Assembly (NCBI RefSeq): GCF_947568905.1
Contig: NC_079166.1
Coordinates: 23,126,001 to 23,190,000 of the forward strand
Source: Ostrea edulis
Taxonomy: Eukaryota
Length of the DNA stretch: 64,000 nucleotides
Direction of reading: 5' to 3'
Under the pieces are notes generated by a model. That model was not told where the DNA came from. It searched no databases and saw nothing but the letters and a program-made list of their open reading frames with translations. The position numbers and the translations under genes are program-made. Each line of letters starts with the position of its first letter. The stretch's first letter is position 1. Below, one piece after another: positions 35,055 through 62,930 of the stretch.

Positions 35055-35101
<47 letters not shown>

Positions 35102-39951: not shown

Positions 39952-39952
<1 letters not shown>
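38522..39952 (-). mobile_element. SINE (non-tRNA head type) split in two by a hAT-like insertion
   Basis: 3' half at 38522-38704 and 5' half at 39865-39952. Joined, they align with the intact copy at 51741-52005. Confidence 0.85.
38709..39864 (+). mobile_element. Internally deleted hAT-like DNA transposon (1156 bp) retaining a TTF-type zinc-finger fragment
   Basis: TIRs CAGTGCTCGAACTGG / CAGTGCTCCCACTGG (13/15). Imperfect target duplication ggtctca. Internal ORF KRKFNREWLRYDSKLGLMFCDIC (39422-39640). Confidence 0.75.
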
Positions 39953-39989
<37 letters not shown>

Positions 39990-40605: not shown

Positions 40606-40657
<52 letters not shown>

Positions 40658-41247
40658 ACGGTGTTCTGGATAGGCTTGGCCCGCACACTGAAAAATGAAA
40701 ATACATGCATGATATTTATTAAATTCATTTTTTTGAAAAAGTCTGATGTAGTTACATACATTGTCTCTTGGAAACAGACACGTAGCATCATTTATCGGGG
40801 GGGGGGGGGGGGTCGAAGGATAAGTTGGTAGTTAGTTAGCAAATGAAAAAAACCTTTCTGCCTGATCTTCGAATTCTTAAATTGTCGGGGAGTGGTGGTG
40901 GTACTGGTGGGGGGGGGGGGGGGGGAGGGGGAGGGGGGGGGAGGGGGAGGGGGGGGTATCCTTTGCTACATGGGTTCAATTCATAATTTTAAGCCTATTT
41001 TTTTTTCTCATTCAATACTACGATCAAGAATATGTGTGTGTGTGTGGGGGGGGGGGGGTGTCACTCAATATATCCTTATTCGCATATGAAAATAAGTGCC
41101 AGGGAAAAGGATTTAAATATACCACATTGTCTATACATGTACTCAAACAACTTCCCAGAGTCCGTTCTAGATTTAGACTGAATGTTGGTGCATACAATGA
41201 AATGCCCACTGACTGATGTAATTTTCATTTATCAAAGATGAACACTA

Positions 41248-41298
<51 letters not shown>

Positions 41299-42687: not shown

Positions 42688-45600
42688 GACAAAGAGCATG
42701 CAACGACGATAGTAAGTAGCGTATTACGTGAAAAATTGTTTATACCAATGTGGGATGTGTTGGATACATGTACAATGATTATGATTATATATTACAGCTG
42801 TGATCCATTTCCGTGTCATCTCGATTTTCTTCGGATTATCTTTCATGCATTTAAGCATTACAACCCAAAACAATTAAGCTATTAATTTACTGAAATTCAA
42901 TTACTAGTTAATCTATGAAATGGACCAAATGATATGGTCAGTATGCTTTGATACAGAGTCCGCTGATTAGAAGAAGAATCATTTTCAACCTTCAATGAAA
43001 GATGATTGGAATCAGGTCGTTTTAAAACTCAACTAATATGTTATTGCGATTTAAAAAGGTAAACAACATATATTTACAGATATATCCAGGTTTAATCATT
43101 CACACAATTTTTTTCAGGATTTGTGATTGACAATTCCAGTGGACAGGAAATTTCCAATAATAACATTCTTATAGATTTTGGCATCATTGAAACTCAGTGT
43201 GACTGTAAGGTCAGTTTCAATTTCTCTGGTGAGTATTTCTACAGTTTGGCAGCAAATCCCGGATATGATGGCTGTGGGACAGCGATAGAAATATCAGTTG
43301 ATAGCAATACAACCTTTAGATTACCTTGTTCATTCAAGCAACCAAGCACTGTATTTGGTACATCTGACGAAACCAGCGATACTGTGAAGTTGATACCTTC
43401 CGTCAATCAGAACATCAAAGGAAACAGTGGTTACTGTGTACGCATTGCAAGTAACAGTGAGTGACATTTTTTTCTTTTCGAATTAAAAAAAAGAAATTAC
43501 AGTAAAACACGATTATAGCGAACATTCAGGACAAGCAAACAATGATTCGGTGTAACAAGGCACTTTTACATTCAATAAAGTTTTGTTATTTTCCACTCCT
43601 AGGGGAATAAACATCTCTTCATAATACGTGTGATTGCGTTATTAGTGTTTTCATTACATTTTACTGTATGCATGTACAGATGGACGGGTTAAAGCAACAT
43701 TAGGAACCAGAAACACTAACGTGTACATCAATTTTCAGAAATATCAAATTACTTCCATGCCTACTGTGGCACGTTAGAAACAGAGTGGTCAACGACTGCA
43801 GGTTACCAGCCGATCAGCACTGATGCAGTGTTGCAAAGAAATACATCTGGCTCCAGAGTCGATAAGACGAGCTCACTACAGTGTATGTTTAGGGTTGTGT
43901 AGGTTTAGTAGAACGATTTTATTCGTACTGTACCACCTCTTGTATGTCCAGGGGTTCATGTTTACTCAACTCTTAATTTTTAAATCCTTATAGAAAATAT
44001 AAAATCTGTCATTGTTTGTTCTCTCCACATTTTAAAGGACATATGAAACACGTGAAAAGTGATTAGGTTTATGAAATACATTCAATTTATTCATACATGC
44101 ATGAAATAAAGAATTATGTTTTATTTCTTATCATTTAATCATATTTTTTAAAATAGAAAAACAATTGGTTTTTCTCACCAAAAAGTTTGAATTTACGTTT
44201 CTGAAATGGCGCGTAGGAGTACCTATTCATAACAAAGAAAACAACAACAAAACTGGCTGTGCGTTCGGTTGAGATAGAGTTACTGTGAAAAATTAAATGA
44301 ATTATACGCTAAATGAAATGTACAATTGTTAAAAACTGAAATAAATAAAAAGGAAGAGAAGTGGTGATTGGATGTATGCTGCATTGCATTCGAGACGTTG
44401 AACACTGGTTGTGTCGTAGGAACGGTGGAATGCGACTCGGCCCCATTTCAATATCAAATAAAAAGCTCAACACCTCTTCATCTAAATTGCGCTCATTGAC
44501 TGAGCCCCATATAACGCAGTTCAATTTCATTAATATTTACCAGATCAAAAGTCGCTGCTTCTCCGTCTTCTTATCGAACTCGTAAAGCAGACGATACATA
44601 CCGTAATATGTCGACTTTTACCAGTCAGCGCCCTACGTCATCAAGTTTACTGTTCTGCCACGTCATCACTAGGCCTCTTTATGTTGCTTCTTTAAATCAA
44701 TTTGTATTGTATTCACATCTTTGGTTGTGTTTATTTTTGGTAGCATCAAACAAATACATTTCGTTTACAATGCATCTGTGGAAATTTCCGAACTATAAAT
44801 AGCGCTAAAATTAGAACGGCCGTTAACGGGGAAAACGCATTTCAGAGAAAAGTAGTCCCGCGTGTTTAGTGCAGAGTAACTCCGCACAATTTTGTTTGAC
44901 ACAGAAATCAAACAAATTTTTCATCCAATCAGTATCGTTGTTAAGTGATCACTTTAAAAGTTATTAAATGGTTACGTTTTAAGAGTAATGATGTAAATAG
45001 GGTAGCTTTAATGGACTTTGAATTTAAAGGACCAATGATGGCCAGAAGAGAAAACAAGCAACTATTATATATGTTAAGATAAGAAATAGTTGAGGGGATA
45101 AATTGGAAACTTTTTGTTGCTTTTGAGATTTGTTTTTCTTCTTCATATCTTGATTTCATGGTTCAAATGATATATTGTATTGTGGAACAGCTAAAAATTC
45201 AAATTTGAGAAAATATTTATTCCAAGACAAAAAATAATAAACTCCACTAATTAATGGTGCTACAGTATTAACATATTGCATATTTGACTACAAGAAAACA
45301 GTTACGTTGATTTGAAACTCTTGGTTGGCAAAGCTTGTATCATTGTCAAACTAGGTTTCATTATCAGCTTTTCACGATTTCAGACAATTCTGAATATAAG
45401 TTCTAATTGTAGATAGGGAGATGGGTATCAACAGCACACTAATCTGTTATTTCTGTTTAGTATACATACATCAAAATATCAACTTCGAACTTTTCAGGGA
45501 TAGTAATTGGTGCAGCGTCCTGTGGAAGTGCGGCTATATTCGCAGTATTTACAGTGATTATAGTGTGGATCCATAAAAGGTGTTTATTGTGAAATCGAAT

Positions 45601-46671
45601 GAATTTGAAAAATATAAATGAATTAGAAAATAAGGACAATGAATATAAAAAAAACCCAACAAATACAGTAGTTAACTCGTTTATTATACTTTTATATCAA
45701 ATATTTCAGTCTGAATGCATGACATACTTTGGATAAAATACCCATAATGATTCTCCGTATGAGAGATTGATAAGCTTCCCGGGATGATGTATATAAAGAA
45801 AGTCAGGTCTCATGACATGCGTTCGTTAGTTTTCTAAAATTTTCATTCCTTACATCTGAAATTTGCAAAACACTGAGCAAGACTCGTTTTGGTGCTGGTT
45901 ATAGAGACTGCATTCACCTAGAATACATTTAGATGCATTATATTTGCTGTAGTATTCCTTATGACGTCATTTAGAGATTTTACCAAGCGACATTTCAAAC
46001 ACGCATCCAAAACGACACTAGGCATTCATTGACAAAACAACATATTGTAACGCCACGGATTACATCAGTATAATCAAGAACACAGCTTTTTAAAAATATA
46101 TTTACAATAAACGGGTAATGTTACACAGTTTTGTTTCAAGGTCCTAGTTGCATTCACTACAACGCAGATGTTGCATGTAATTAAGAGTGATATTGTGTAG
46201 CAATATTTTCATCGGAAAATGCTTATAACTTAATTTATTATAATGAATTATCACACCATTGAATCTATACACAGTGCTAATATGTAATGACCCATTCTCT
46301 ATTGTTTTGCAAATATCATGCATCAAATTCAAACTTTTATTTTCATTTAACCCCACATCAAAAGACACAAGAAGGATGTTCCTTATACGAAAAAGACATT
46401 ATCAAGTCAACAAGCAGTTGGAAAGGAGAAGAGAGTTGAAAGTGGTCTTAAGGACAACCCGTTGTATCAATCAGCTGATAGAGATTCGTACATGCGTAGT
46501 CAGAACCCAACTTGTCCATCGATCTGCAATAGTCTTGGTTTGATAGAGAACACTTTATATCAGTCTGCAGATGATGATGTACAGGGTAGAGAGGAGAGTT
46601 TTAAGAACATGGACAGCGACAATATATCTGATCTCCCAATGTATTCAGAAATAAACCATAGCCATAAATAA
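42688..46671 (+). pseudogene. CUB-like-ectodomain receptor paralog (gene C), decayed in the cytoplasmic exons
   Basis: Exons 42688-42711 (microexon GQRACNDD), 43118-43456, 43739-43882, 45498-45579 (TM IVIGAASCGSAAIFAVFTVIIVWI), 45710-45806 (stops in all three frames) and 46351-46671 (acceptor reads AA not AG; NPLYQS, NTLYQS, MYSEI). A possible signal exon lies at 37191-37254 (low confidence). Confidence 0.6.
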
Positions 46672-49600
46672 ACAAGGAGGATAAGGAACAGTCTAACTCC
46701 GATTATCTCAAATATAGCTGCAGAATTTAGAGTAAGGTCATTAGACTAGCTGTGATATACATTAGAGTACTAGAGTATGCGCCATGAATAAGGCTTCAGG
46801 AGGGAGACTATTTTGCGCATTGATGCGTGTCCAAGATGGAGTCAAAATTCAAACTTTAGTTCAAACATACATCATTGATACATTAATGTATATCAAATTT
46901 TTAGAAAAGTTTCATAATGGAACTAATTCACCCCCCCCCCCCCTTATACATACAGTGAACATAGACCTTCACCTGGGGGACATTTCAGTTAGTTAATGCA
47001 ATATACATGTACATGTATTCTCAGTTATCCAATAGTGAGTTTTTGGTTCATTGTGAAACTACAATTAGAAATCTTAAACATATGAAATACACACCTATCT
47101 GTGAGAGCAAGATGACTCAGATGAACTTACATGTAGTGATCCATGGGCAGTCCATGGGTCTCTTTCCATTGATATTAATTATTTATTGAAATATGAAATG
47201 GTTATTTAAACATATTTGGTGTATTATACTGTATAGTGATATAAATTTCTATCAAAAATATGTATAGGTAATAAATTTGGTCCAGTTATTACAAGAAATT
47301 GTATGAAAAATAACTAAATATTTAGGCAATCATTGTGAGTGCGAAAAGGTCAACTGCAATAGCACACACTATATATCATTCTTAAATGGCTCATAAAAAC
47401 TTCTAGTATTGTGAGTTTGAATGCTCCATATTGTAATTTGGGAATGCTTAATCATTTAAGGTCAATAGTTTATCTCTGCTGACTGTATCTCTTAAAATTC
47501 ATTTCTAGAAGGGGGGGGGGGGGGGTAGGGTTACAAAATCTGACATAGTTTCAGATTAAACCTCATTTGGTATATTTTTTTATATTCAATATTTTAGATA
47601 CTACTTGACTTATTGTAAAAATGAAATAAAATCAAAAATTTTATGAGCAGAATTTTGTTGTTGTCAAAAAATGTATGCCTGATAGTATTTGAGAAACGCC
47701 ATATTTAGGGTAAATTTGGACAATTGCCAAGTCGAATCATCCCAATGTCTTCCTTAGATGCATTTTGAATTTCTAATCAATGTTGACATTTTATCTGTTT
47801 GTGTTTGATTTACATAACTATATATGATAAACAATATTTCTGGTGTCAATAAAATTTTTATTGGCTTTTGTGTTAATTTGCTCAATTTTGGCATTTTTTG
47901 CCTTTAGGTGCTGCAAAAGAGGGGATTTAAATATCGCTTTCCTCGACAATTAACCTGATTACTTTTGTTGATTTTTTTATATGTTTTAGGATAAAGTCAA
48001 AATTTTATAATAAATAAAATTGAAAAAAAATTCAATGAACGGTTTTTTGGGGGCTAGTTATCAATAGCTATCTGAAAAGAAGTTTAAAACTAAACAAAAC
48101 AAACCAACATATCTAAAGTGCTGAAACAGTAAAAGTAAATATATCATATATTTTTATTTAAAGAAATTCATGAACTCGTTCATCTATTTAGTCGTATTAC
48201 TATTTTTCTATTTCTCAATTGGCTAAAAATTAAAATATTGATAATCATACCATTTATTGTTAACAAATTAAGTGTGTGATTACAAACTGCACGTAAGTCT
48301 TGTATTTTTGGTATTCAAAAAAAAAAACATGAATAACTGTAGAAGAAACTAATAAACAAAGCAGGATGGCGGCGCCCATATGGATCACAAAATTTTCAGT
48401 GAACGTATGTAGAGATTATCTCTATTCATTTGCTGATTTTCTCATTGTTTTTCTTTTACATACGTATTACTTTCAGAGCTTTGCTTCGAGGACGGGCCGA
48501 AGGCCCGTCCGAACTTCGCTCAATATAAATGTACATGCACATAAAAAAAAAATTTTTTGGGGGGGGAAATAATAGGATTCGTTGAAATGCATTTAACTAT
48601 ATTTGTATCAAGAATGACCGTTGACAAAGATTGATCATTACTGTCTAAACTGGACTTTTTTTCTGCATTTATCATTTCCTCAGAAAGTAAAATAATATGT
48701 CTTACGGCGTGACCGTGTTTGAGGGCGAAGCAAAAAATATTGGCATTAGTATATAAATCCATAACAGGACAAATGTATCCCGAAATATTAGCACCTAACG
48801 TGTGAGGACAAAGCTCAATCAAAGTATTCTAACTTTAGACAGTTTTGATCCGCCTATTCATTGAATGTGGGAAACGCTATGCAACTGATGTAAACAGTGC
48901 ATTGCGACGTCATATTCAGCGTCGGTGTTTAGCAAATACGCAAACATAGGAGACATGGCACAATCGCGTTATTCAAGGAGTGATTATATATGATTAAGAA
49001 AATAAGATTTACATGCTTTTACGGGTTTTATGTAACATCTCAGAACGACGTGAACTTGGGTACACGAGATTCAAAATGGGGAAATACATGTCCATGCGCT
49101 AGTATTCGAATCGACGCCATTGGGACCAAAATGTTTAAGTTCCATAGGTATGGTTTAATTTTTCATTAGTTTTCAATATATTCCTTTTAAACATGTATAT
49201 ACGTGTTACATTGTAGCTATAGGGAGAGCTCCGCTCTCACAGCCCTTGGGGCCGTGAGAGGGCTTCGCCCTCTATTAGGATAAACCATTGGAAATAAAAA
49301 TGATTTGCCTTTCGATGATTCAATTAGATGACATTGTTTCAGTCAGATGATAAATAAGTTCTTGCGTGTACCAATATCACATTGACTGAATCTATAGTTG
49401 CAGGTGAGAATTTTGGAGGTTTTTAATTCGTCTCTTTATGCATCTAATCCCACCCCTTGTGTCTTCAGGGGCCCTTGTTTATCCTGTTCTCGATTTTGAA
49501 TTGTTTAGAAGATTGTAGAGTGATTTCTCTTTTGAAAATTAACCAACAATCTTCTATCATCTGTATATATGCATATCTTTCTATTTATCTATGTCAATGG

Positions 49601-49762
49601 GGTCAAACTACTTATTCGTTCATAAACGTATATGACCCATGGTTACGTGCTTCAGTTGAATTTCGTTGAAAGAAAACTGGATATAACTGAATACAACATG
49701 ATATAACGTTAGCTTCAAGTTCATCGACCTGTTACTGCATTTTATATTCTGTTACAATAGAG

Positions 49763-52700
49763 ATGTCTTTCAGCATTATGTATATTCTCCCAGTTCTCAT
49801 ACTCAAATGGATTACCTGCAACTCCTTTGTGAATGGTAAGCATGAATCGTATATCGCCTTCAATTTATAATGATCAATATTTGAAAAGATAAACCTTTCT
49901 CTCGTCATATATATTTTTAAAATTCGACTGAATATTAATGTAATGTTACAGTATGTAAAGAATTTGTCTATTGAGCAGGTTAAGTCCCAAAACATTGGAT
50001 GGATTTGAATGACATGTGTATTCGATAAAGAAATGTGGATTTATGCCTTTATATTGTAGGTCAGATATGCACCACTGACACTACTGGTGAGTATATTAGT
50101 AGGCTTAACCTTCGGAATTTATTGATATGGCGCTGCACTGCCTCAACCGCACGATGATTATTTTTCAATCTGATTAAGATACAGACCTCTCAAACAGCGC
50201 AGTCTTACATCATCGTTTGCAGTTTCATTACTCTGTGAAAGATAACTCTGCAATTTCGAATTATTCCTCGAAATAATAAACACTCTCATGTGTTGCATTA
50301 TGCATGGACATGTACACATGTCTAAGTACACATACAGTATGTCCAAAGGGGATACAGATATCATTAACTAAATCAAATTGTTTAATTTTTCTAAATCAAT
50401 CTAATTAAAGATTGATATTTTTAACCATTATTTCCTAGTCTCTTTATCTCAGCTGTAGTTCAGACCTGTGGAGAAACTACTAAGACAACCGGAGAAATGT
50501 ATCTGGATTTCTATACCGGGAAGCTGGCGACAAACTGTTCATGTCTACTTGTTCCCATGTTTTCCGGGCGGATTATAGTTAGCATTATATCGATGCCAGA
50601 TATTGAATCTCGGTTAATTATTGCTGAACAAGGTAATGGAAGAATAAATAACACATTCATGGACTACAGAAAGAGTCCCATAATGAAGAGAGTGAAAGAA
50701 CAGAGACCAGTCATCATCAGACCTCACTACCATTCCACTGGACAAAACTTCTTCTGTGTATCGGTCTCCTCTCAAGGTATGCGGATATAGATGAGTGTAA
50801 TAAAATGTGGGATTTTTGTTTTCAGTGATGGCACGTTTAGCTTCATGCAAACAAAGGATAGGACTAGTAGCAGATTCAAAGTTTAATTAAATAATCCCAA
50901 TAAATAAGGTATGTACCATTCATGGAAATATCATCCATGCAACTATTTGAAAACCACTCTGATGCAATTTACTGGTATGTGCATAATTGTTCTTTTTATG
51001 TATAGAAAAACGAACATAATTTCTTTTCAACACAGTGTAGATGTCAAATATTCCGTGCGTACAGACCTAACTTTCCGTGATTTAATCACAATCATACGGT
51101 CATAGTAAGAAAAGCCAGATTTGTTAGCAGAAACCAATGAAATAAAAATGATAAAAAATACCACCAAAATGTTTAAGGAATATTAGATAACTGTTCATAA
51201 TATGCTGTAAAGAATGGAATATGCCAATTTACATGTACTGTTACAGTACGATTTTAAGTTCTATGTTACAATATCTTAATAGTGATATCCAGATGGACGT
51301 CTTAAGTCATTCATTGTTTAGGCTTTAGGGTACATTTAGTATTGTATTATATTTGTTCTGTACATCGACAGAAATACTCGGTACACAGCCCTGAAATAAA
51401 CACTCTATGTACTTAGAACGGTGATCTGTTTCTATGTACAGTCTTCTACTTTAAGGTGAAGGGGATATCAAGATTTCCTGCGGATCTGACTCAAATAACT
51501 TGACATCGATGGACAAGAATCCCACCGATTTTAACGCACTGGTTCCACGTCGGATATGTGAGTAACAACAATGTCTGTTTTCTGATTCATGCTTATTAAC
51601 CACTTTAGGACTAACCAACGTAGTTTACCACGTACTGAATATGTGTTTTAGCCGTGACAATAATGCTTTATGATATAGAATAATCAAGTTCATCAATATC
51701 GCATTACAGATAGAAAACATTCCTTCTTTGCATTTTAAGTCCCGTGGCGATCCGGGTTAGAGTAGGTCCTCAGTACCCCTTGCTTGTCGTAAGAGGCGAC
51801 TAAATGGGGCGGTCCTTCGGATGAAACCGCAAAAATCGAGGTCCCGTGTCACAGCATGTATGGCACAATAAAGATCCCTCCCTGCTCAAATACCGTAAGC
51901 GCCGAGCATAGGCCTAAATTTTGCAGCCCCCCGCGGCAATTGTGACGTTTCCATGTGAGTGAAATATTCTAGAGATGGACGTTAAACAATATACAATAAA
52001 TTGATTATATATTTTAGTCACTGTGTATGATGAATTTCAACCTTCCCTCTGCGGTGGTCTAGAGGTAGAACGTTCGACCCACATGCGGAAGGTCGGGGTT
52101 TGAAAGACCTTAGTCGTTAAAATTAATAGTGACAGTTCCATCTCCAAACGCTCGGCATCAGGTGTTAACGTCACGGGTCATCAAAGATTACCTTAAAAAC
52201 GGATGTCCCGTGTCACCGTAGGTGTGATGCGCTAAAGAAACCCTCACTGCCCTATTGAGGTAAGCGCTCAGCATGGGCCTATATTTGAAGCCCTTCACTG
52301 GAATAGGTGACGTCTCCATATGAGTGAACAATTCTCGAAAGGGACGTAAAACAAGATACAACCAATCAATCAATCAATCAATTTACCATTCCACCCTTGG
52401 TGTGTTCAGGGGTCCGTGTTTACCCTGTACTAGATTTTGTATTCTTTATAAGATTATGAGATCCGTCGCTGTATGTTATCTTCACTGTTTTCATGTGTGA
52501 TATGACGAGAAGTTATTTTAGGGAGCATTGTGACGATAGGTGTAACTGTATCCTTCCTGGTTCTGTGCTTGTTCACGGTGTGTCTCTATATGCACGTGCG
52601 CGGAAGGTATGTATGAAAATCATAATTTACAACGTATCCACGTGTTATAAGATATCATTAATTATTGATTAAGGAAGTAGTATATTGTGTGTCAGAAATA

Positions 52701-53067
52701 CAATCAAATTCCAGTGCTGAGTATTTTTCTTTTCAAATTAAAATATCAATTTTACCTCCATTATGGATAAACAACAATAGGATACCGGATGTTAATGACA
52801 GGACATGTTTAACATATCACTTTATCTTGTTTTAGAGCGGAGAAGTCTACAATAGAATCTGACGGAGGAGACGAAATAACGCAAACAAGCCGTGTCTTCT
52901 ACAGCGTCCGCGACAGTGAACATGTATCTCCGAACATTTATAATGAATACGAAAAGCTGGGGATGAAATCAATGCATTTCTACAATGATTTATCATTAAC
53001 AGTTGATCAAACATCGATATCGCCATACACCAATGTTCCAATGGATGAAAATACGTCCGACATATAA
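49763..53067 (+). CDS. Type I membrane receptor with atypical CUB-like ectodomain and tyrosine-motif tail (gene D, 280 aa)
   Basis: Exons 49763-49835 (signal peptide ending VNG), 50060-50086 (27-nt microexon QICTTDTT), 50453-50776, 51456-51557, 52522-52606 (TM SIVTIGVTVSFLVLCLFTVCLYM) and 52836-53067. Total 843 nt, all GT-AG, phases consistent, no stops. Confidence 0.85.
51741..52005 (+). mobile_element. SINE, structured non-tRNA head, in intron 4 of gene D
   Basis: Starts cccgtggcgatccggg like the copy at 39952 (minus). Shared body gtcccgtgtcac...aaagatccctccctgctc...gagcataggcctaaattt. Confidence 0.8.
52045..52383 (+). mobile_element. tRNA-derived SINE (MetaSINE-like body) with (CAAT)n tail
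   Basis: A-box-like gcggtggtctagaggtagaa head and degenerate B box. Body shared with 51741-52005. Tail caatcaatcaatcaat. Confidence 0.75.
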
Positions 53068-54609
53068 AATTAAGGTTACTTATTGCAATGAAACTTAAAA
53101 CGTATTTCACCTCGGTGTTTGTTGTTGTGAAAATATATTTAGCATTAAACAGTGAATCAAAAGTAAAACCTTATTGTTCTCTTTAAGTCCTTATTTATAA
53201 TTATAATGATATCAGTATAATATTAATTCATGTTTTGTTATGTATTTATTGTTTTAGTTTGTTTTACATATAAAACGCTTTAGGGTAATTGTGTTGATTA
53301 GAGAAAGCACTATATACATGTACAACAATACTATTTCATTGAACATCGATGCAAACGGAAACTATATGACAAATGGGATGACTCCCGCTACTACATCGTC
53401 AACTTCCCATATTCATGCAGCAATATTTCAATATCACTCCCATATGGTATTGATGTCTCTCAGCTGATTTAATATGCGAAAGAATGTTTTGCGTATGATC
53501 GTTTTTTTTAAATCGAGACAGGCTACTGAGAAAGAAGTCGATGGATTTCAACATTTTGAAGTTTTCGTTTGTGGTTTTGCCTCACTATCATCATCGCCGT
53601 CGTCGTACTCATCATTTCTACTATAAAATATGTTCTTCGGGCAATAAACAATACAGGGTTTTATCAAGTACCCATTTGCCAATTTACAAACTAAAGAATA
53701 CTATCTACACATATATGCATGATACTTTTATTTAGTTAGTATTGGCGTCGAACAAAGATACTGATTGTTTTAATCAGTGACATATTAAAGTACTCGAGTT
53801 GTCACTTAAAACGATGTTATTGGGATGAGGCTGTCTGTTTAGGCAATACTAAGGAGTTGGAGTCTTTAGTCTGGGCATTATCTCAGCACCATTGGGGTGT
53901 GAGGTTTATATTTACGACGTATTGTTGGGTTAAGTTTGTCAGTCTAGGTAATATTTAAGGGCTAAGTCTGTTAGTTTACGAAATATATCAAAAGATTTAG
54001 TTACTTGGTTTACAGGATATTAAAGGAGGCTTGTCATTTTAGGGGTTATCAATGACTACGGATGTCAGTCTAGGCAGTGACAAGGACACGGCTTGTCCGC
54101 CGGGGTGGTAAACATGGAATGATGTTGTCAGTATTGACGATTAAAAATGTCAGTTCCTAGGAATATCTTTGTCATTATAATAGCGGACTAGTATTGAAGT
54201 TGTAAGCCTCGCAGGTATTCTACAATTAGATGTGTCAGCCCTAGCGATGTACATTATTGGAATGTTTATTCGTTTTTATATCGACCGTTGGGATAGGAGG
54301 TTGATGATGAAACATATGACAACGGAGACTAAAATCGAGTTTCTATGAAGCTTACTATTCCACGTGGAAATTTCAAGAGTTATCTAACTTCCATGAAAAT
54401 CATCTGTTTCTAGGATTCTTTGACAGATATTTACGAAAACAACGGAAACTTTTTATGTATTTTCAATCTTGGTACATGTATATCGTTCTTCGTGGCAAGT
54501 TCCCATAATTTGTTCTGTTTATTTTATGAATATATCAGTTGTACAATCCTTATATTTTCAACTCGCCTCAATTTGCACAAAACCTTTAAACAATTACACC
54601 ATTACCTAC

Positions 54610-56253
54610 AGTACACGACACGAGTTTTATGCGTGTTCCACGCAACGCGGTGGAACAAATTTGCCCCAAACACGGTGGACCTTTAAAATTGTCGGCACCT
54701 TTGAAGTCCTATTTTTCTGCGCGAGCTAGACATTGAAGTCCACGGAGGATCTCCGTGGATGCCACCGCGCATCTCCGTGGATGTCACCTGTACCTCCGTC
54801 GATGCCACCGTGTACCTCCGTGTGATAAAACCAAGAAATAATTTCCGAAATAATTCACCCAAAAAACCTTTTCGCTTGGCCAGCATGCATGCCCCCACCC
54901 CATTACTTATTTAGAAATTAGCTATAAATCATTCAATTCTTGTAATTGTTGTTTAATGATACGTTGGTGTTTTCGGTACATATCCGTATGTAGACTTCCC
55001 TGCAGGCGTTCACACCTTTTTATGAAACGCCCAAATTCTCGACATCCTGTATATAAACACCTGTATTATTCCTACCACTCGTCGGTACATTGTTTCACGG
55101 CACGTGCAGCACAATTTCACCAAATAAAAAAAGGGTCATGAACAACGACAATCACATGCCAGTAATTTCAATTTGATAAATAGCAGTTCAAAGAAATATG
55201 TACTATAAACAATGATTTATTTTTACGTAAAGTTTTAATTGTAATTAGGAATATGTGATTAAGGTCAGCTATATACATGTACATGTTTACATTGGAGATG
55301 AATTTCATTATGTACTCAACTGTGAAGCAATGTGAGCAAAGAATCAAATTTTTATCATCTAAACAAATAAATATTTATAATATCTTTACTTTTAAACAAA
55401 CCTTTAGAAAACTCCGTACTTTCATTAAGAAAATAATAAAATAAAATGTGCTCCCCTACCTAGAATGTCCATACTTCACATTAATAATAATACGTTTTTT
55501 TTTAAAGGTTTTTTTCTTCTAACTTGATAAATACTTTATTACACGCATGTATTATTTACTAAATGTATATATAACAGTTTTTTGTCTTTATATTTTTGTA
55601 TACCATTGCATAATGGTGATGAGATCCAATAAATTGAATTGAGTACATGTAGTCTTGAAATATCACAAAGTATATAGTTGACAACGATTGAAATAAAAAT
55701 GCAGACGTTTTCTCGTTTATTCAGTAACTCAATAACTTGCGCGTCTTCTGAATGAAAGTTGTAAAACAAACGTACTAGGTTTTGGTCAGTTATAACATAA
55801 TATGGGGGTAAAATTCATCTAATCTCCGCTAGCAATGGGTTTTGAGTCAACTGTGCCTTCGTGGACGAATAATCTCGGCTTGCGAAGATGGAAAGAAAAA
55901 AAAGCCTAGATAGTCCGCTTGCATTAACATGTATTATGAAGGTGAAATCGAAGAATTATCCAGTAAATCCATTGATGTTGCAGTATATATAGCATGTATT
56001 TATTTTATTTTTGACTGAGAGGGAGATAGACAGCTAAGCACGTAACATCGTTTTAGAAGGAGGGGGATTCATTCATTAGTCCTAACCCGGACCAGCCGAA
56101 AAATTTAACATGTAAGGAAAACAAAATGGGAAATAAAAAAAATATTAGAATGAAAGGGGATGGATAATTAATCAGAAAGAAATTGTACTTTCAAGATTTA
56201 TACTGAACGTATTAAACTTCCCGTATCTGCATACATTCATGAATATTACCAAT

Positions 56254-56304
<51 letters not shown>

Positions 56305-56616
56305 CTTTCATTATCTAATGCATCTAAAGATTAAATTAAAGATTTTAATAATCGATAGCGTATATGAATAAAAGCAAATAATCGTTAAGTCTTTTCTGTT
56401 TCTATTGATATTAGTCTTTTTTTCATGAACTAGTTGCCTTTGACACCGAGGATTTACATCCTTAAATATTGATTACAAGCACGTAGAATCGGAGAGGGTG
56501 TACTTTGAAAACTTGAAAGTTAAGGATTTAGCCTTGTAGCTTGTAGCGACCTACCCACTGCACGATTTAAGAAATTGAAGTCGGAAGGGGAAATTGAGAC
56601 AGTTTCAGACTACTAC

Positions 56617-56647
<31 letters not shown>

Positions 56648-57495
56648 ATACACACATGCTCCCAATTTAAGGTTTTCCTAATCGGACAATTTAAGCACCA
56701 TTTTTGTTGTTATTTTATTTCTTGTCAAGAAATTTACACAACTTAACCGGCAACATACCCCTTCTGATACATTGAAAAATATAAGTAATGTTAGCACGGG
56801 GCTCTATAAAGTTTAATCTGCAGTTTGGTCATACTTCGTCATTCAATAACTTGTTCAAAATAAAAAAAAAATGTTTGTCGGGTTAGCGGTACTATGATGT
56901 ATGACTATAACAATGACCTGTGTATAACTTGTACATTCCATGCAAATTTGAAGGGGTTTTCGCCTCAGTAGAACAATGGGGGTCAGCTAATCCGTGTATT
57001 TGAAATCAACAGAAGTGCTTAGCTTCTTGCGGAAAGTGTGAAATATATTGGGTCGGCGCAAGATACCCGTGATCTTGGACTAGATCTGATATCGCGCCGA
57101 CCCAATATATTTCACACTTTTCATAAGAAGTCAAAACCCAAACTAGCCAACCGTAATTGAGTTAACTGTGACAAAGAACCTAGGAATTTGCATGGTATAT
57201 ACTTATTATACAAAAATCATTGCATTATCCAGACACTCCCGATGAACATTTTTTTTTTATGAAAACCTCTATCAAAGTTCATCGAACATAAGTCTCGGTC
57301 AAATGTAATTAACTCGGGATTTTAAAAATAAATCATTCGATGGTTTGTATGTTTGCTTCTATTAATTACGTAATAAATTAATTCCAATTTGTTAATCATC
57401 GAAAATGCTCTAATTTCTATATTGGATCAAGTTATATTTGTCAAGATGCATATCAACACAATATGATGGAAGTAATTATGTTAAACAGCACATTT

Positions 57496-57557
<62 letters not shown>

Positions 57558-58061
57558 ACATCGGTAATTATTAAATATCCCCATCACATGTTGTACATGT
57601 ATGTTTTTCATTTACTGAATATACTAATTCGCATTCAAAACAGGAATTGCCTGCAAGTACGCATTATTTAAACATAGAATTTAAGAATATTTTAATGAAG
57701 AAAGAAGACTAAAAGAAAAAATTCAAAACCAGGTTTTCTTAAAAACATAATATATAGTGTTTGGTATCGTTGGAATTGGCTCAAAATGCTGAAAAACAAT
57801 ATAAGTATCAGGGGGGGGGGGGGGGGAAATATTGACATTTTTTTCTTTTCTTAAAATTCCACCCTTATCTCGATTATTTGGCCTGCGGCACATTTTCACA
57901 TCTCCCGTAAGGCGCCCGTGGCCAGAACAAAGCTCTTAGCAGCTGTGTGTATTCACAAATAACACACACCGTGGAACACGGAGGACACGGTGTATCTCCG
58001 TGGATTTTCCACCGTGGTCTTTCCACGGTGGGGTGTATAAAACTCGTGTCGTGTCGTGTAC
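54610..58061. mobile_element. Candidate ~3.45-kb element bounded by inverted termini with subterminal ccacgg/ctccgtgg repeats
   Basis: agtacacgacacgagttttat at 54610-54630 has its reverse complement (plus one extra gacac unit) at about 58036-58061. Both ends carry clusters of ctccgtg/ccacgg motifs. No target duplication was found. Confidence 0.45.
57033..57120. repeat. Perfect 27-bp inverted repeat with 34-nt spacer
   Basis: aaagtgtgaaatatattgggtcggcgc (57033-57059) / gcgccgacccaatatatttcacacttt (57094-57120). Confidence 0.9.
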
Positions 58062-58199
58062 TTGACTGCGTCTTTCTATTTAATTTGTTCGCATTGATGA
58101 TGGCATTGTCAACATATTCTTGATATGGAAGTTGCAAGTAAAGTAATCATACATGTGCTCTTGCAAAAGGAGCTATGTATGATCAACTTAACACCACAA

Positions 58200-58582
58200 T
58201 GGTGACCGGCCGACGGGGGATGCTTACCCCTCATAGGTACTTGACCCCACCTCTGGTGTGTTCAGGGTTCCGTGTTTGCCCAAACTCTCTATTTTGTATT
58301 GCTTGTAGGAGTTATGAGATTGATCACTGTCGTTATCTTTACCTTTCACCTAAATCTTCACAACGTTGGTATTGGGCTCAGTACAATTATGTCAACGATT
58401 TCAATGCTTGGTATCCAGAATCAAAGAAGACGACTTTCTAAGATGAAAAGTGAAGATAACGAACAGTGATCAATCTCATAACTCTCATATCAAAGCAATA
58501 CAAAATAGGTAGTTGGACAAACACGGACCCCTGGACACACCAGAGGTGGGATCAGGTGCATAGGAGTAGTAAGCATCCCCGG
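58200..58582. mobile_element. Tail-to-tail inverted pair of Naiad-type 3' ends
   Basis: Plus copy at about 58200-58348 and minus copy at about 58445-58582, roughly 100 bp apart. Confidence 0.85.
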
Positions 58583-59696
58583 TGATATGATGTATTTTCA
58601 ATATATGGCAAAGTTAGCCCAGCCCAGGGGCATGAACTCTGAACTCAGGGAGCATGCCACTTGTCATTACAGCCTTGCAAACATGTTGCTTCCCCGATGT
58701 AAAAGATTTTCTGATATATGATCCATTTTAAATGTACCACCAACTTACTCCACTGGTGCATGACGCCTGAATGAAGGGGTCCTGCATTTTATGAGTTCGG
58801 TATAGTGCACGCTGATCATTAAAATCAGTTTGACTGCTTGAATTCCAGGAGTAAATGCGATTTTCTAAGATACAATGGATTTACAACATATTACCAACAC
58901 AGGAACCAAGTATTTCTCATTTTTGGTTTGTTATGTTCATGCCAGGAAGAACGATGTTTGAAGATTATATTAATTTTGATGGATTTCGCCACACCCCTTA
59001 TACCCCAGGGACGCAGAGTCTATAAAGTTAATAATTTCTTCTACCCATCGAATCATTTATGTTATATACCAAGATTGGCTGGAAATGGTTCAGCCCCTCA
59101 GCAGCAGAAACTGAAAATGTTCAAATGTTTACGCCAGATGCAGGATGAGCGACGTACGACGACATGCGAAAAGAGATATCAGGAGGTCACCTGAATGACT
59201 CGGGTGACCTAGAATATATCAATAAAGGTCACCAAAATGCGTCAAAAAGCAGAAAACCGTGACCTCAGCCTGATTTTCGCTTAAATTGTCCATACATGCT
59301 TCTGCGATAAACAGATTAAATAAATCAAGTGGCCTTAACATTCACACGTTCATGCGGTGGTTGTGAATCACTGACGATAGGCCGGTGAGTTACAAAGCAT
59401 ACACTCATAGCATACAGGAAATAAATGATCACACGACAAATTTCCGAAACATTATAATTAAAAATTAAGTACATTAAGAATACATGGTATATCAGGAAAT
59501 ATATAAAATGCCAACAAGTACTTGCCCATCTTAAAACGTTCTCTTTGTCTTTTGCAATTACATTAAATTGTGGAAAGGTCAGATCATCAGTAGTTTACAT
59601 TGCAAGTGGGTGAGTGTTTTGATTCGCCTTAATGATGGACTTCCTTTAAACGGCTAGATGCCGTATGTAGGTGATGACTTATTGCTTAGAAGGAAA

Positions 59697-61119
59697 ATGA
59701 AATCAATGAAGAGTGCACGAATAAATGATTTAATTAATTACGCTTTGTTTATTTCGTTAACGGTGGATCTCTGGCATAACCAAACCGTGAACGGTAAGTA
59801 TGTTTTTTTTTATTTCATTCATTCACTATTTACAAATCATGAAATACTGTGTATAGTCTAAATTTCGCTCCATTTTAATGTTCGCTTTTTTATCCGTAGG
59901 TTATAGTCTATGTTAGGAATTCAGTGAAAGTAGAATAAAAATTTAACGAAAAAACATTTGACCTGGATACCGTGAAAATAACAAGACGTGGATCTAATGT
60001 TGCATCAGGATTTATGTTCCAATATGTAAGGATTCACATGTTTGAATTATGTTCCAATATGTAAGAATTCACATGTTTGAATTGTATTCAATTCAGAGAA
60101 CGTACACAGACTCTTGTAAATGCTTTATGCCCGTGTTGTCAGGAAGAAGCTGCTGAAATAGTATGTAGGAATAATGACCTTAGGGAGACCAATGTTTAAT
60201 TAGAAATCCCTTTCGAGTGATATATCGGTTTATATCAAAACCAATGGTTTGTATGTATGTCATATAGCTACTGATAAGAGAGGTGCACGCTCGTTGCACT
60301 AGTCCCCTCCCCCTTCGTGAGTTCTTTCCCTGATGACGTAATCAATTTATTAACAAAATATTAATTCAAATTCATAACTTGTTCATTATCTAGATCCATG
60401 CTACAGAACATATGCAATGAAATTTAAAGACTGTTCTGATACTTGTTCTTGTTGCTACATGCGTTGAAAGAAAACCTTTAAATCAAGGGATGTCAGATCG
60501 TGTCGTTTATTGACTAAATAAATGACACAGAAAAACAAAAATATATACAATATTTTACATATACCAAATATTGATCGAATTTGATTGCTTGGATAAGATC
60601 ATACTGTGATAAGGATATTTAAAAAATTATGTTGCAAATTAGTGCTTAACCCAGCTATTGTTGTATTATGGTTAAAGGTTTGTGCAACATAAAGGTGGCG
60701 TAAAAAAGGCCCACTTGCACATACTAGACCAAACTAAGTAAACATGTCAAACAATCCAAGCCACATGTATAATAAACTAGTCCACAATGGTTATAATTTA
60801 TAGTGAATCCCGAGCCCACTCCACATCGAACTCGAGCATGATTGCAAATGCGAATAACGGTTACAATATGTAAAATACTAGATATTTGATAATGTTATAT
60901 GAAATGAAAATAGCTTGCATATTATACATTTTCTGATATGAAATTCACGTTCTCACACGGAGACTTCCAAATACCAATCAAGTATGTATCATTCAATCAA
61001 ACTTCTTGGGGAGGATTGCAAAACTCGCGAACTCGGGTGGTTAAGAATGCTGATTAAATTACACAGACAGTATATAAACATTTGTATTGCAGGTCAAATC
61101 TGTGGACATTCAACAAGTA

Positions 61120-61170
<51 letters not shown>

Positions 61171-62930
61171 CTTGCTACGACATATTACTTCTTTAACATA
61201 ACATGCATACCTAAGTTTTTTTTTTTTTTTTTTTTACAGATATCATCAAAACCTGCGGAGAGAAGCTGATGAACGTCAGTGACGCGTCTCTTGATTTCTA
61301 TACAGATAATCTCCAAACAGATTGCCATTGTTCGTTGAAAGCTAGTCGGAATGGACACATTCAATTTCAAGTCCTGTCGCATCCAAACAAGGAGAATTGT
61401 TTTAGCCAAATTAATATTCGAACTGCATCCATTTTGGGGGGATCTCTTATCTTTATTAACTGTAATTTGATAAGTGAAAAAATAAACGTACAGGGGGATA
61501 GTGACGTCATATCGATATGGCTTTCCCATTCCCGTAACAGAACACCAGTCAAGAACGGATTTTTCTACTGCCTTAATATCTCAAGTATCGGTGAGTGGAT
61601 TTTCCCATATACATTTAGAGTTTACAATATTGATCAATAATAAATAGGAGAAAGGCATGTAGATTGTTGAACTGCACATCGCGGGATCGAATTCATCAGG
61701 TTTTGTTTTCACATTACTTTATATTTAAACTGCCTTTTTAACTAAAAAGAGTAAATTAGAAAATTTTCAGTTCCAAAATACTGTTTTACATATCCTTCGC
61801 TTCCCATCCATATCAAAATTGACCTGGTGTAGCAATCATCCTTAAAACGGGACAATAGCTTACACTGAACAAGCATTTTGAAAGGTTGAAAATTATAATG
61901 AACATGATGAAGAGAACGAGGGTCAAAGGTCATTATGTGCAAGATTCGTACTTTATTTACATATTAAGCATTGTCTTACTATCTGATGTTCTGCCGATAT
62001 ATTCCAATAAAGATAATATATATTGTAACATTATAGAACAAATGATTTTTTTTTATTATATTCAAATATATTTGGTTGCTAAGCAACACTACCATAACAA
62101 ATGTTATAAAAAAGTACCACCGTATCTTTCCTCTCTAAGTCCAATGTATACGAATGTTCAAGCACATATTTTCATTCACTAAATTTGAATGTACTTGCAT
62201 CGTAGTATACAAAAATGTGCTTTTTACATTCAACCTCTCAAAACCTATTTCTAGACATAATTCTTGGTACAGGGTTGTCGACATGCATTGGCCAAAATCG
62301 GTCAATCGACTGGAACTTCACGGGAAACAAGATAATGCCCAAAATCTTAAACAAAAAGTATTTTTTGATAATAAAATTAACGAAGACATCTTTCACTTCA
62401 AATGTATATTTTTTTTAATGTAATGTTTCTATGTACTTAATTGACTTTTATCTGCTTAAAAAAATAGAAACAATCTTTTAGATATAATATGGAAACTATA
62501 CATGATATATCTTATGCCCGTAGCTTCAAACTAGAGACACCCCTTTCGCGTAGTCCTGTTTTTCGCACCCTCGGTCAAATTGACTGGTGTGGTAGAGAAA
62601 GGATTAAAAAAGGATTATTGTCCACGAATCGAATGTTACAGGATGTACGTTGATATACAATTGATCATTTTAGTTCCATTAAATTAATTATATCAAATCG
62701 ACTTCAAACGGTATCAATCAATCAATCATGTTGTAGAATCATGGCGGGTTTTCTCTGCGGATTATCGCAGATCTGTCACGTCAGAAAAGTATTTTTCTAT
62801 AGTTTATGTAATGTCAAATAACAATGGTGAATAAATTCGTATATTTCAGATCATGAAAGCAAATTAAATTTACGTTGTGATGAGAAATCTAGTGCTAAAA
62901 AAGAAATGAACGCACCCTCTTCCTCACAAG
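59697..62930 (+). CDS. Third CUB-like-ectodomain paralog (gene E), 3' part not in the window
   Basis: Exons 59697-59793 (ends TVNG), 61093-61116 (24-nt microexon QICGHST), 61240-61590 (TCGE...LDFYTDNLQTDCHC...FYCLNI) and 62850-62930 (KLNLRC). Same exon phases as gene D. No TM exon is seen before the window ends. Confidence 0.75.

What the first reader, a model, noticed from the sequence alone, without database searches (positions are those of the whole stretch)
42688..62930. Tandem cluster of three highly diverged receptors with an unnamed CUB-like ectodomain and shared microexon architecture
Genes C, D and E share one exon plan: signal exon, 24-27-nt Cys-containing microexon, ~330-nt domain exon, short exon with the last Cys, and (in C and D) a TM exon. 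They share the motif pattern (L/I)DF...CxC...(Y/F)C(L/V)x(I/V)...C. Elsewhere sequence identity is low, and the Cys count differs (7, 6, 8). The tails of C and D carry different tyrosine motifs. Rapid ectodomain divergence, birth-and-death decay and varied signalling tails are hallmarks of paired immune-receptor clusters. I cannot assign the domain to a named family.
Basis: partly seen in the sequence, partly recalled or inferred. Interest (0 to 1): 0.7.

Follow-up and report, generated by a model that had tools for sequence, protein, structure and literature searches.

The report
Oyster receptor family with CUB-like domain
Three neighbouring flat-oyster genes encode related single-pass membrane receptors from a small, unnamed, mollusc-only family, with a CUB-like outer domain and tyrosine-motif tails that differ by subfamily; an immune role is plausible but was not tested.

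Summary
Genes C, D and E (Ostrea edulis LOC125673795, LOC125677402 and an E-type gene) share one exon plan with canonical AG/GT splice sites. The plan is signal exon, 24/27/24-nt Cys microexon, 339/324/351-nt phase 1-1 domain exon, short Cys exon, TM exon and tail exon. Spliced contigs in two runs confirm D, microexon included.

Two corrections. C's signal exon lies at 37191-37254, outside the stated span. E is not truncated: its TM and tail exons lie 457-1922 nt beyond the window end.

- **Extent:** the array continues for about 80 kb, with seven E-type and two F-type units, several of them broken.
- **Domain:** no Pfam or PDB sequence match. Two AlphaFold models give a jelly-roll whose best structural matches are mostly CUB domains, but only at Z about 8-9.
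- **Range:** only 46 representatives among 1.84 billion proteins. Every one that carries an organism name is a mollusc, and none has a described function.
- **Tails:** D has an ITAM-like plus an ITIM-like motif, and the ITAM-like motif is conserved in Crassostrea gigas. C, E and F have NPLYQ(S/P)A. A third subfamily has YEEI.

C, D and E are old subfamilies, not "paired" receptors. Immune function is untested.

The parts
37191..37254 (+). Gene C (LOC125673795) signal-peptide exon, phase-1 donor.
   Evidence: ATG plus hydrophobic core plus G|gtaagt, conserved in paralogue C'. It is the N-terminus of RefSeq model P0015. Splice sites checked.
42688..42711 (+). Gene C 24-nt microexon (QRACNDD), phase 1-1
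   Evidence: present in P0015.
43118..43456 (+). Gene C domain exon (339 nt, phase 1-1) encoding the CUB-like jelly-roll. The 'TCG' cysteine is replaced (NSS).
   Evidence: profile E 1.2e-37. Paralogue C' keeps the Cys.
43739..43882 (+). Gene C short exon with the last ectodomain Cys, plus stalk
   Evidence: P0015.
45498..45579 (+). Gene C transmembrane exon
   Evidence: P0015.
46365..46671 (+). Gene C cytoplasmic tail exon with NPLYQSAD, NTLYQSAD and YSEI motifs, ending at the stop codon
49763..49835 (+). Gene D (LOC125677402) signal-peptide exon
   Evidence: Covered by spliced contigs of runs X1 and X6. Matches P0098.
50060..50086 (+). Gene D 27-nt microexon (QICTTDTT), phase 1-1
   Evidence: Exactly 27 unplaced letters sit between the signal-exon and domain-exon pieces of contig record 22 of run X6. 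Present in P0098.
50453..50776 (+). Gene D domain exon (324 nt, phase 1-1). It lacks the central Cys pair.
   Evidence: (E 3.4e-35).
51456..51557 (+). Gene D short exon with the last Cys
52522..52606 (+). Gene D transmembrane exon
   Evidence: An 83-letter unplaced stretch sits at this position in the X1 transcript contig.
52836..53067 (+). Gene D tail exon with an ITAM-like YEKL-x7-YNDL and an ITIM-like SPYTNV
   Evidence: The ITAM-like motif aligns with YEQL-x7-YNDV in the C. gigas orthologue P0017. Covered by contigs in runs X1 and X6.
59697..59793 (+). Gene E (unit E1) signal-peptide exon
61093..61116 (+). Gene E 24-nt microexon (QICGHST), phase 1-1
   Evidence: The same microexon is found in E2-E7.
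61240..61590 (+). Gene E domain exon (351 nt, phase 1-1), with the full set of six cysteines
   Evidence: E 1.4e-50. AlphaFold model m36a465b0497f.
62850..62930 (+). Gene E short exon with the last Cys. The gene continues beyond the window (TM exon L011:457-553, tail exon L011:1706-1922).

Best explanation
C, D and E are three expressed or expressible members of a small, mollusc-restricted family of type I membrane receptors.

Shown:
- Each protein has a signal peptide and one jelly-roll ectodomain (about 116 of its ~135 residues modelled alone) that resembles a CUB domain. The domain is built from three phase 1-1 exons (Cys microexon, domain exon, short Cys exon) and carries 6-8 cysteines.
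- A short stalk, one TM helix and a 70-105-residue tyrosine-rich tail follow.
- The ectodomain scaffold is shared across the family, while the tail module differs by subfamily.

Inferred mechanism: ligand-driven clustering leads to tyrosine phosphorylation of the tail, which recruits different adaptors.
- D: a Syk-type tandem-SH2 kinase through YxxL-x7-YxxL, and a phosphatase through SxYxxV.
- C, E and F: a PTB-domain or endocytic adaptor through NPxY.
- The conserved chromosome-7 subfamily: a Src-type SH2 through YEEI.

The ligand and the tissue of expression are unknown. The E subfamily is a young, Ostrea-specific tandem array turning over by birth and death.
For: - Exon plan, splice sites and phases.
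- The D model is identical to RefSeq P0098 and is supported by spliced contigs in two runs. C is confirmed by P0015, and E-type architecture by P0001.
- Homology.
- Extended array of E1-E7 plus F1 and F2, with TM and tail exons.
- Family range: 46 representatives among 1.84e9 proteins. All those with an organism name are molluscs: Ostrea, Crassostrea, Saccostrea, Pinctada, Mizuhopecten, Mytilus, Solemya, Haliotis.
- Fold: AlphaFold gives pLDDT 73.5 and pTM 0.71 for the domain exon alone, and 83-93 per block for most of the ectodomain with 39 sequences. VIA-align finds spermadhesin CUB at Z 8.4 (108 aligned, 3.2 A), Kremen CUB at 8.4-9.0, and about two thirds of the top 30 are CUB domains.
- The language-model neighbours that carry a name are all CUB or CRF-BP clusters, at 0.76-0.86.
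- Tail motifs. The ITAM-like motif is conserved between Ostrea D and C. gigas LOC105348475 although overall identity is only 36%.
- ITAM-to-Syk-to-ERK signalling has been demonstrated in oyster haemocytes for a different receptor, CgIgR (PMC6994640).
Against: - No sequence link to CUB or any other family. Pfam gives nothing for the ectodomain of 39 members at E<=1, and a PDB profile search gives 0 hits at E<=10.
- Foldseek's best E-value is only 1.6e-3 to 2.5e-3.
- Z of 8-9 is within the range the tool calls common for models with no true match. Collagen-binding, GOLD and SID1 sandwiches score equally.
- Short tyrosine motifs arise easily by chance in Tyr-rich tails. No phosphorylation, binding, tissue or infection data exist.
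- dN/dS of about 1 among E copies fits relaxed constraint as well as diversifying selection.
- C has an odd Cys count and a weak signal peptide.
Confidence: 0.6

Rival explanations
1. This is a diversifying immune-receptor cluster. The receptors are haemocyte pattern-recognition or self/non-self receptors. The E array supplies variable recognition domains, and D (ITAM/ITIM) and C/E/F (NPxY, phagocytic) supply activating, inhibitory and engulfment outputs.
For: - A tandem array with birth-and-death turnover.
- Domain-exon dN/dS of about 0.7-1.4, with some pairs higher.
- Domain-exon dN is 2-3 times that of the TM plus tail.
- D orthologues share only 36% identity yet keep the ITAM-like motif.
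- Oysters have ITAM-Syk signalling in haemocytes (PMC6994640).
Against: - No tissue, haemocyte or infection expression data could be obtained. No paper mentions any family member.
- The ectodomains are not 'paired'.
- The family is small, at about 20 domain exons.
- C, D and E are ancient subfamilies.
- Omega of about 1 with several dead copies suggests decay as much as selection.
Confidence: 0.25
2. These are non-immune adhesion or scaffold receptors of the CDCP1/DCBLD type. A CUB-like ectodomain mediates protein-protein or matrix contacts, and the tail is a Src-family substrate that docks adaptors, with roles in development, epithelial adhesion or endocytosis.
For: - CUB-rich structural and language-model neighbours, including clusters carrying the CDCP1_CUB_6 family.
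- A YEEI motif in the bivalve-wide, slowly evolving subfamily, and NPxY in C, E and F.
- That subfamily appears once in this genome and forms a clade spanning oyster, pearl oyster, scallop and mussel, which suggests a housekeeping role.
Against: - No sequence match to the CDCP1 or DCBLD Pfam families.
- Rapid turnover of the E array is unusual for adhesion scaffolds.
- The ITAM-like spacing conserved in D points to tandem-SH2 docking.
Confidence: 0.3
3. The genes are mostly decaying, functionless lineage-specific genes. The shared features reflect common descent only, and the tail motifs are chance.
For: - Five of the seven E units are broken.
- C has lost a structural Cys.
- RefSeq isoforms of C and E7 splice out part of the domain or skip the microexon.
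- Omega is about 1.
Against: - C, D, E1 and E7 have fully open frames and intact splice sites.
- D is transcribed and correctly spliced in two runs.
- The D lineage, with its ITAM-like motif, is retained in Crassostrea.
- Named family members span five bivalve orders and a gastropod.
Confidence: 0.1

Closest known systems
CUB domain (Pfam PF00431; spermadhesins, C1s/MASP, Kremen, neuropilin)
   Same: - A jelly-roll beta-sandwich of about 110 residues encoded by a phase 1-1 exon.
- The best structural superpositions are CUB domains: spermadhesin Z 8.4, 108 of 109 residues aligned, rmsd 3.2 A; Kremen Z 8.4-9.0.
- The Cys spacing TCG-x22-CxC and (G/N)C-x20-C parallels the two canonical CUB disulfides. 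That comparison rests on my own knowledge of CUB.
   Different: - No detectable sequence similarity. PF00431 finds 46 genuine CUB exons in this genome at E<=1e-10 but none of this family. Thirty-nine members give no Pfam hit to the ectodomain at E<=1.
- There are extra cysteines: one in the microexon, the second in CxC, one in (Y/F)C, and one in the short exon.
CDCP1 (Trask) and DCBLD1/2: single-pass receptors with CUB-type ectodomains and Src-phosphorylated tails
   Same: - Type I topology with a CUB-like ectodomain, one TM helix and a tyrosine-rich tail carrying SH2-docking motifs (YEEI, YxxL).
- Language-model neighbours include clusters with the CDCP1_CUB_6 family.
   Different: - A single small domain instead of three CUB-like domains or a CUB+LCCL+discoidin set.
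- No sequence homology.
- Restricted to molluscs.
ITAM/ITIM immunoreceptors, including oyster CgIgR (PMC6994640), and vertebrate paired receptors (KIR, LILR)
   Same: - D's tail fits YxxL-x7-YxxL and also has SxYxxV.
- Tandem array with birth-and-death turnover.
- Oyster Syk binds an ITAM receptor.
   Different: - The ectodomain is not immunoglobulin-like.
- No pairs of near-identical ectodomains on opposite tails.
- No evidence of immune expression.
Draper / CED-1 / MEGF10 engulfment receptors (tail logic only)
   Same: The family carries NPxY motifs (C, E, F) and ITAM-like motifs (D), the two docking types used by Draper for Ced-6 and Shark. The Draper comparison rests on my own knowledge.
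   Different: - A completely different ectodomain, since Draper has EGF repeats.
- Here the two motif types sit on different paralogues, not on one tail.

Membership tests
CUB domain (PF00431) | Sequence match to the Pfam CUB profile above the gathering score | tested here: not met
   No Pfam hit at E<=10 for the three domain exons. No hit at E<=1 for the ectodomains of 39 family members. PF00431 finds other CUB exons in the same genome, so the profile works there.
CUB domain (PF00431) | CUB jelly-roll fold superposable on solved CUB structures | tested here: inconclusive
   Z 8.2-9.0 to Kremen, C1s and meteorin CUBs for model 1. Z 8.4 to spermadhesin and Kremen CUBs for model 2. ColG collagen-binding, SID1 and GOLD sandwiches score alike, Foldseek E is only about 2e-3, and the tool's own note puts typical chance-level best Z at 7-8.
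CUB domain (PF00431) | Two conserved disulfides (C1-C2, C3-C4) with typical spacing | tested here: inconclusive
   Spacing of 22 and 20 intervening residues in E1. D has lost both cysteines of the second pair together, as expected for disulfide partners.
ITAM-bearing receptor | YxxL/I-x6-12-YxxL/I in the cytoplasmic tail | tested here: met
   D has YEKLGMKSMHFYNDL. The C. gigas orthologue has YEQLRISSLHVYNDV at the aligned position. C and E lack it.
ITAM-bearing receptor | Tyrosine phosphorylation and recruitment of a Syk-family tandem-SH2 kinase | not testable with these tools
   Needs biochemistry. The pathway exists in oysters (PMC6994640).
Paired immune-receptor cluster (KIR/LILR type) | Near-identical ectodomains coupled to opposite (activating or inhibitory) tails | tested here: not met
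   D versus E: 37% identity over 52 residues only. The E units with a tail exon (E1, E3, E5, E6, E7) all have the same NPLYQSAD-type tail, read NSLYQSAD in E5.
Paired immune-receptor cluster (KIR/LILR type) | Tandem array with gene birth and death | tested here: met
   Twelve domain exons lie within 23.03-23.26 Mb of contig C3. There are stop codons in E4 and E6, missing TM and tail exons in E2 and E4, and Cys loss in E3 and E5.
Paired immune-receptor cluster (KIR/LILR type) | Expression in immune cells or induction by infection | not tested
   Run metadata were coded, only one read-laying run was available, and no literature exists.
NPxY-tail (PTB-docking or endocytic) receptors | NPxY motif in the cytoplasmic tail, conserved among paralogues | tested here: met
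   C has GLKDNPLYQSAD, E has GLKENPLYQSAD and F has LKDNPLYQPAN. Binding to adaptors was not testable.

The most novel reading that the evidence does not exclude
Molluscs possess a previously unrecognised, non-immunoglobulin immune-type receptor system. One cryptic CUB-like ectodomain scaffold is wired by exon shuffling to alternative phosphotyrosine modules: ITAM/ITIM in D, NPxY in C, E and F, and YEEI in the conserved subfamily. The Ostrea-specific E array supplies fast-evolving recognition variants on haemocytes.
Probability: 0.2. Interest if true: 0.75.

Novelty: new variant of a known kind. Interest (0 to 1): 0.45.

Why it matters
The flat oyster is a declining aquaculture and restoration species limited by disease, and most of its candidate receptor genes are listed only as "uncharacterized protein". 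This work does three things.

- It defines a family that is missing from Pfam and from the searched literature.
- It gives exact gene models, a fold assignment and a family profile.
- It identifies a conserved ITAM-like tail on a non-Ig receptor.

That turns the question of which receptors feed the Syk, Src and PTB pathways in bivalve cells into experiments with named genes: LOC125677402, LOC125673795 and LOC130046423. If the family is not immune, it is still a clean example of one ectodomain scaffold combined with alternative signalling tails through phase 1-1 exons.

Tried and rejected
- **Pfam:** scans of the three domain exons (E<=10) and of 39 family members (E<=1) gave only sub-threshold hits to TM and juxtamembrane segments such as TMEM154 and SIT.
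- **PDB sequence search:** a profile search found nothing at E<=10.
- **Foldseek against PDB:** both models gave no hit at E<=1e-3.
- **False positive:** P0043 (2603 aa) from the representative search is an FG-GAP repeat protein, not a CUB link.
- **Profile-profile test against CUB:** I tried to build a CUB alignment from this genome for hhalign. The test was not run.
- **Literature:** searches for twelve LOC ids, four XP accessions and one UniProt accession (K1QYY7) found no paper.
- **Earlier notes:** a word search of earlier scan notes added only the neighbouring-window note.
- **Readings rejected:**
  - E as a secreted or truncated member, because its TM and tail exons lie just past the window.
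  - C, D and E as recent, rapidly diverged duplicates, because the tree shows old subfamilies.
- **Joined models:** Searches used single exons by reference, or public protein ids. The only joined step was an equality check inside a script against P0098.


Full report
**Source and setting**

The window is Ostrea edulis chromosome-scale contig C3, bases 23,126,001-23,190,000. The species follows from RefSeq proteins that map to a contig of the same length, 98,268,724 bp. All of the finding lies on the + strand.

**1. The observation**

Reading the sequence and checking every boundary in a script gives three genes with one plan and canonical AG/GT sites throughout.

| Exon | Gene C | Gene D | Gene E (unit E1) |
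|---|---|---|---|
| Signal | 37191-37254 | 49763-49835 | 59697-59793 |
| Microexon | 42688-42711 (24 nt, QRACNDD) | 50060-50086 (27 nt, QICTTDTT) | 61093-61116 (24 nt, QICGHST) |
| Domain | 43118-43456 (339 nt) | 50453-50776 (324 nt) | 61240-61590 (351 nt) |
| Short Cys exon | 43739-43882 | 51456-51557 | 62850-62930 |
| TM | 45498-45579 | 52522-52606 | L011:457-553 (beyond the window) |
| Tail | 46365-46671 | 52836-53067 | L011:1706-1922 (beyond the window) |

- The microexon, domain and short exons are all phase 1-1. The TM exon is phase 1-2.
- C's signal exon lies 5.4 kb upstream of the stated start. It is conserved in a 90%-identical segmental duplicate, C', 138 kb upstream. It is also the N-terminus of RefSeq model P0015.
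- E is not truncated. Its TM and tail exons begin 457 nt past the window end.

The similarity is more than chance:
- BLASTP gives D-E 8e-12 and C-E 1e-4.
- A profile of the domain exons scores C, D and E at 1e-37, 3e-35 and 1e-50.
- The microexon recurs with the same flanks in D and in all seven E units.

Public models agree. The D exons concatenated in a script translate exactly to XP_048771404 (P0098, LOC125677402 isoform X1, 280 aa). C is LOC125673795 (P0015). The E-type unit E7 is LOC130046423 (P0001, 287 aa).

Transcription and splicing of D are directly supported.
- In run X6 (same organism, no mismatches), a 740-nt contig lies on 49700-49834, 50452-50773 and 51453-51557. Exactly 27 unplaced letters sit between the first two pieces, which is the length of the microexon. 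A second contig covers the tail exon.
- In run X1 (a relative or divergent allele, with about 3% other letters in the domain exon and up to about 10% in the tail exon), a 1040-nt contig lies on the signal, domain, short and tail exons. It has 24 and 83 unplaced letters where the microexon and the 85-nt TM exon belong.
- These are contigs, so they show the spliced form but not its level or tissue.

**2. What surrounds it**

The three genes are the left end of a larger array. Searching the assembly with E's domain exon and scanning 110 kb fetched to the right of the window shows seven E-type units and two divergent F-type units, spanning roughly 80 kb beyond the window end.

| Unit | State |
|---|---|
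| E1, E7 | Complete |
| E2 | Has signal, microexon, domain and short exons; no TM or tail exon |
| E4 | As E2, and its domain exon carries a TGA |
| E3, E5 | Broken or shortened signal exon; the (Y/F)C cysteine is changed to W. E5 has a tail exon, but no TM exon was found in the scan |
| E6 | A TAG in the domain exon; about 9 kb separates its domain and short exons, against about 1.3 kb in the other E units |
| F1, F2 | No microexon; the signal sequence runs directly into the domain |

Birth-and-death turnover is therefore real, but it shows outside the window, not in gene E.

A broader profile built from 39 family proteins finds 20 domain exons in the 895-Mb assembly. Nineteen are on contig C3 and one is on C7. 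These counts are lower bounds, because the tool scores only its best candidates.

**3. What the domain is**

*By sequence it belongs to nothing named.*
- Pfam gives no hit at E<=10 for the three exons.
- Pfam gives no ectodomain hit at E<=1 for 39 family members.
- A profile search of all PDB sequences gives nothing at E<=10.
- PF00431 does recover 46 ordinary CUB exons elsewhere in this genome at E<=1e-10, and none of this family is among them.

*By predicted structure it is a jelly-roll beta-sandwich.*
- E1's domain exon alone with 10 sequences gives mean pLDDT 73.5 and pTM 0.71, with eight strands.
- Full-length E7 with 39 sequences gives per-block pLDDT of 83-93 for most of the ectodomain. 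The short exon supplies the last strand. A TM helix spans residues 188-219 and the tail is disordered.
- Foldseek finds no significant PDB match, with best E 1.6e-3 to 2.5e-3.
- VIA-align on the second model gives Z 8.4 to spermadhesin (108 of 109 residues, rmsd 3.2 A) and to Kremen CUB. About two thirds of the top 30 are CUB domains.
- The tool itself warns that Z of 7-8 is typical for models without a true match.

*Other weak pointers to CUB.*
- Language-model neighbours with a name are all CUB or CRF-BP clusters, for two distant family members, at scores of 0.76-0.86. These are leads only.
- The spacing of TCG-x22-CxC and (G/N)C-x20-C parallels the two canonical CUB disulfides, which I know from the CUB literature and did not test here.
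- D has lost both cysteines of the second pair together.

I read the domain as a cryptic, highly divergent CUB-type domain with extra disulfides, at about 65% confidence. "CUB-like and unnamed" is a fair description. Membership of Pfam CUB fails.

**4. Family range and history**

A profile search of 1.84 billion representative proteins returns only 46 hits at E<=1e-3. One of them, P0043, is a false positive and is really an FG-GAP protein.

Every hit that carries an organism name is a mollusc, and none has a described function; all carry placeholder or automatic names such as "uncharacterized protein" or "mucin-5AC-like". The named species are:
- Ostrea edulis
- Crassostrea (Magallana) gigas, C. 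angulata and C. virginica
- Saccostrea echinata and S. cucullata
- Pinctada imbricata
- Mizuhopecten yessoensis
- Mytilus californianus
- Solemya velum
- Haliotis rufescens, with a four-domain, 843-aa protein

A maximum-likelihood tree of 50 domain segments omitted some rows:
- P0001, P0002, P0003, P0005 and P0015, as duplicates of window-encoded rows.
- P0043, as a false positive.
- Segments covering fewer than 70 profile positions, which removed Haliotis P0034.

The tree gives three groups:
- A C-type clade (support 99/95) with Ostrea, Saccostrea and C. virginica.
- A clade (support 92/75, below the tree's star threshold) that includes Ostrea, C. gigas, Pinctada, scallop and mussel; its Ostrea member is the C7 gene.
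- A D/E/F group. D pairs with C. gigas LOC105348475 (support 99/96), and the E copies form a tight Ostrea-only cluster.

Long branches make the deep joins uncertain. C, D and E are therefore old subfamilies kept side by side, not recent duplicates that diverged fast. Only the E expansion is young, at 80-90% protein identity.

Divergence among the E copies:
- Domain-exon dN/dS by the Nei-Gojobori method is mostly 0.7-1.4. It reaches 4.7 where dS is tiny.
- The domain's dN of 0.07-0.10 is 2-3 times that of the TM plus tail, at 0.035.
- With 116 codons, dead copies and likely gene conversion, this cannot separate diversifying selection from relaxed constraint.

**5. Tails and the likely mechanism**

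All tails are tyrosine-rich, but the motif type tracks subfamily.

| Subfamily | Tail motifs |
|---|---|
| D | YEKL-x7-YNDL (ITAM consensus) and SPYTNV (ITIM consensus) |
| C, E, F | GLK(D/E)NPLYQ(S/P)A; C adds NTLYQSAD and YSEI |
| C7 subfamily | YEEI and a conserved HWNWTY |
| Saccostrea C-type | Repeated SxYT(T/S/A)L |

Ostrea D and its C. gigas orthologue are only 36% identical over 215 residues (E 5e-44). Even so, the ITAM-like segment aligns as NEYEKLGMKSMHFYNDLSL against NEYEQLRISSLHVYNDVSL. That argues for constraint on this segment.

Oysters do use ITAM-to-Syk-to-ERK signalling in haemocytes, as shown for the Ig-type receptor CgIgR (PMC6994640).

My best reading is a family of type I receptors that pairs one ectodomain scaffold with alternative phosphotyrosine docking modules.
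- Shown: topology, fold class, motifs and their conservation, and transcription of D.
- Inferred: surface location, phosphorylation, adaptor identity and the ligand.

**6. Comparison and verdict**

The closest functional analogues are CDCP1/DCBLD-type CUB scaffold receptors and ITAM/ITIM receptors. In tail logic, Draper/CED-1 is also close. The family is a sequence member of none of these.

The "paired receptor" label fails its defining test, because there are no near-identical ectodomains on opposite tails. An immune role remains possible but untested. No paper in the searched library mentions any member.

I rate this a new variant of a known kind: an unnamed, mollusc-restricted receptor family with a cryptic CUB-like domain. 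It is of moderate interest.

**Limits**
Single exons by reference, and public protein ids, were used instead.

Noticed in passing
L011:2783-L025:4623 (ext 66783-78623, just right of the window): Unit E2 has signal, microexon, domain and short exons but no TM or tail. The next unit, E3, has a broken signal exon but keeps its TM and tail. Because all ectodomain exons are phase 1-1, splicing E2's short exon to E3's microexon would be in frame and give a two-domain receptor. The same pair is duplicated as E4+E5. Haliotis P0034 shows that four-domain proteins exist in the family.
   Followed up: partly
window 51636-52482 (intron 4 of gene D): Very high-copy repeats, one with a tRNA-like start. Summed contig depth in DNA runs reaches 1e5-1e6, against about 25 for the flanking sequence.
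   Followed up: no
window 43210-43338 (inside gene C's domain exon): RefSeq isoform X2 of LOC125673795 (P0015) uses an internal donor and acceptor that remove the 43 central residues of the domain. RefSeq isoforms of LOC130046423 skip the microexon (P0049) or use an internal acceptor (P0052). These may be splicing noise or regulated variants.
   Followed up: no
window 37509-42215 (intron 1 of gene C): About 4.7 kb of this intron does not align to the 90%-identical paralogous segment C' (G000:C3, about 23.03 Mb), where the signal exon and the microexon lie only about 1.5 kb apart. The extra sequence is rich in simple repeats.
   Followed up: partly
window 12423-12707 (-) and 34856-35131 (-): Open frames on the minus strand encode EGF/laminin-type Cys repeats (CSPGYVGPNCSIPCRYP..., CPHGFYGPSCSLPCRYP...). 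They look like exons of MEGF10/Draper-like genes upstream of the cluster.
   Followed up: no
G000:C7:28763937-28764410 (-), locus L036: This is the only family member found off contig C3. It belongs to the conserved YEEI/HWNWTY subfamily, with members in C. gigas (LOC105321153), Pinctada, scallop and mussel. The C. gigas cluster includes full-length open frames on Logan contigs of 1.3-2.7 kb, which may be transcripts.
   Followed up: partly
window 61127-61170, 56258-56303 and 57503-57557: Long (CT)n and (GA)n microsatellites. One starts about 10 nt after the donor site of gene E's microexon.
   Followed up: no
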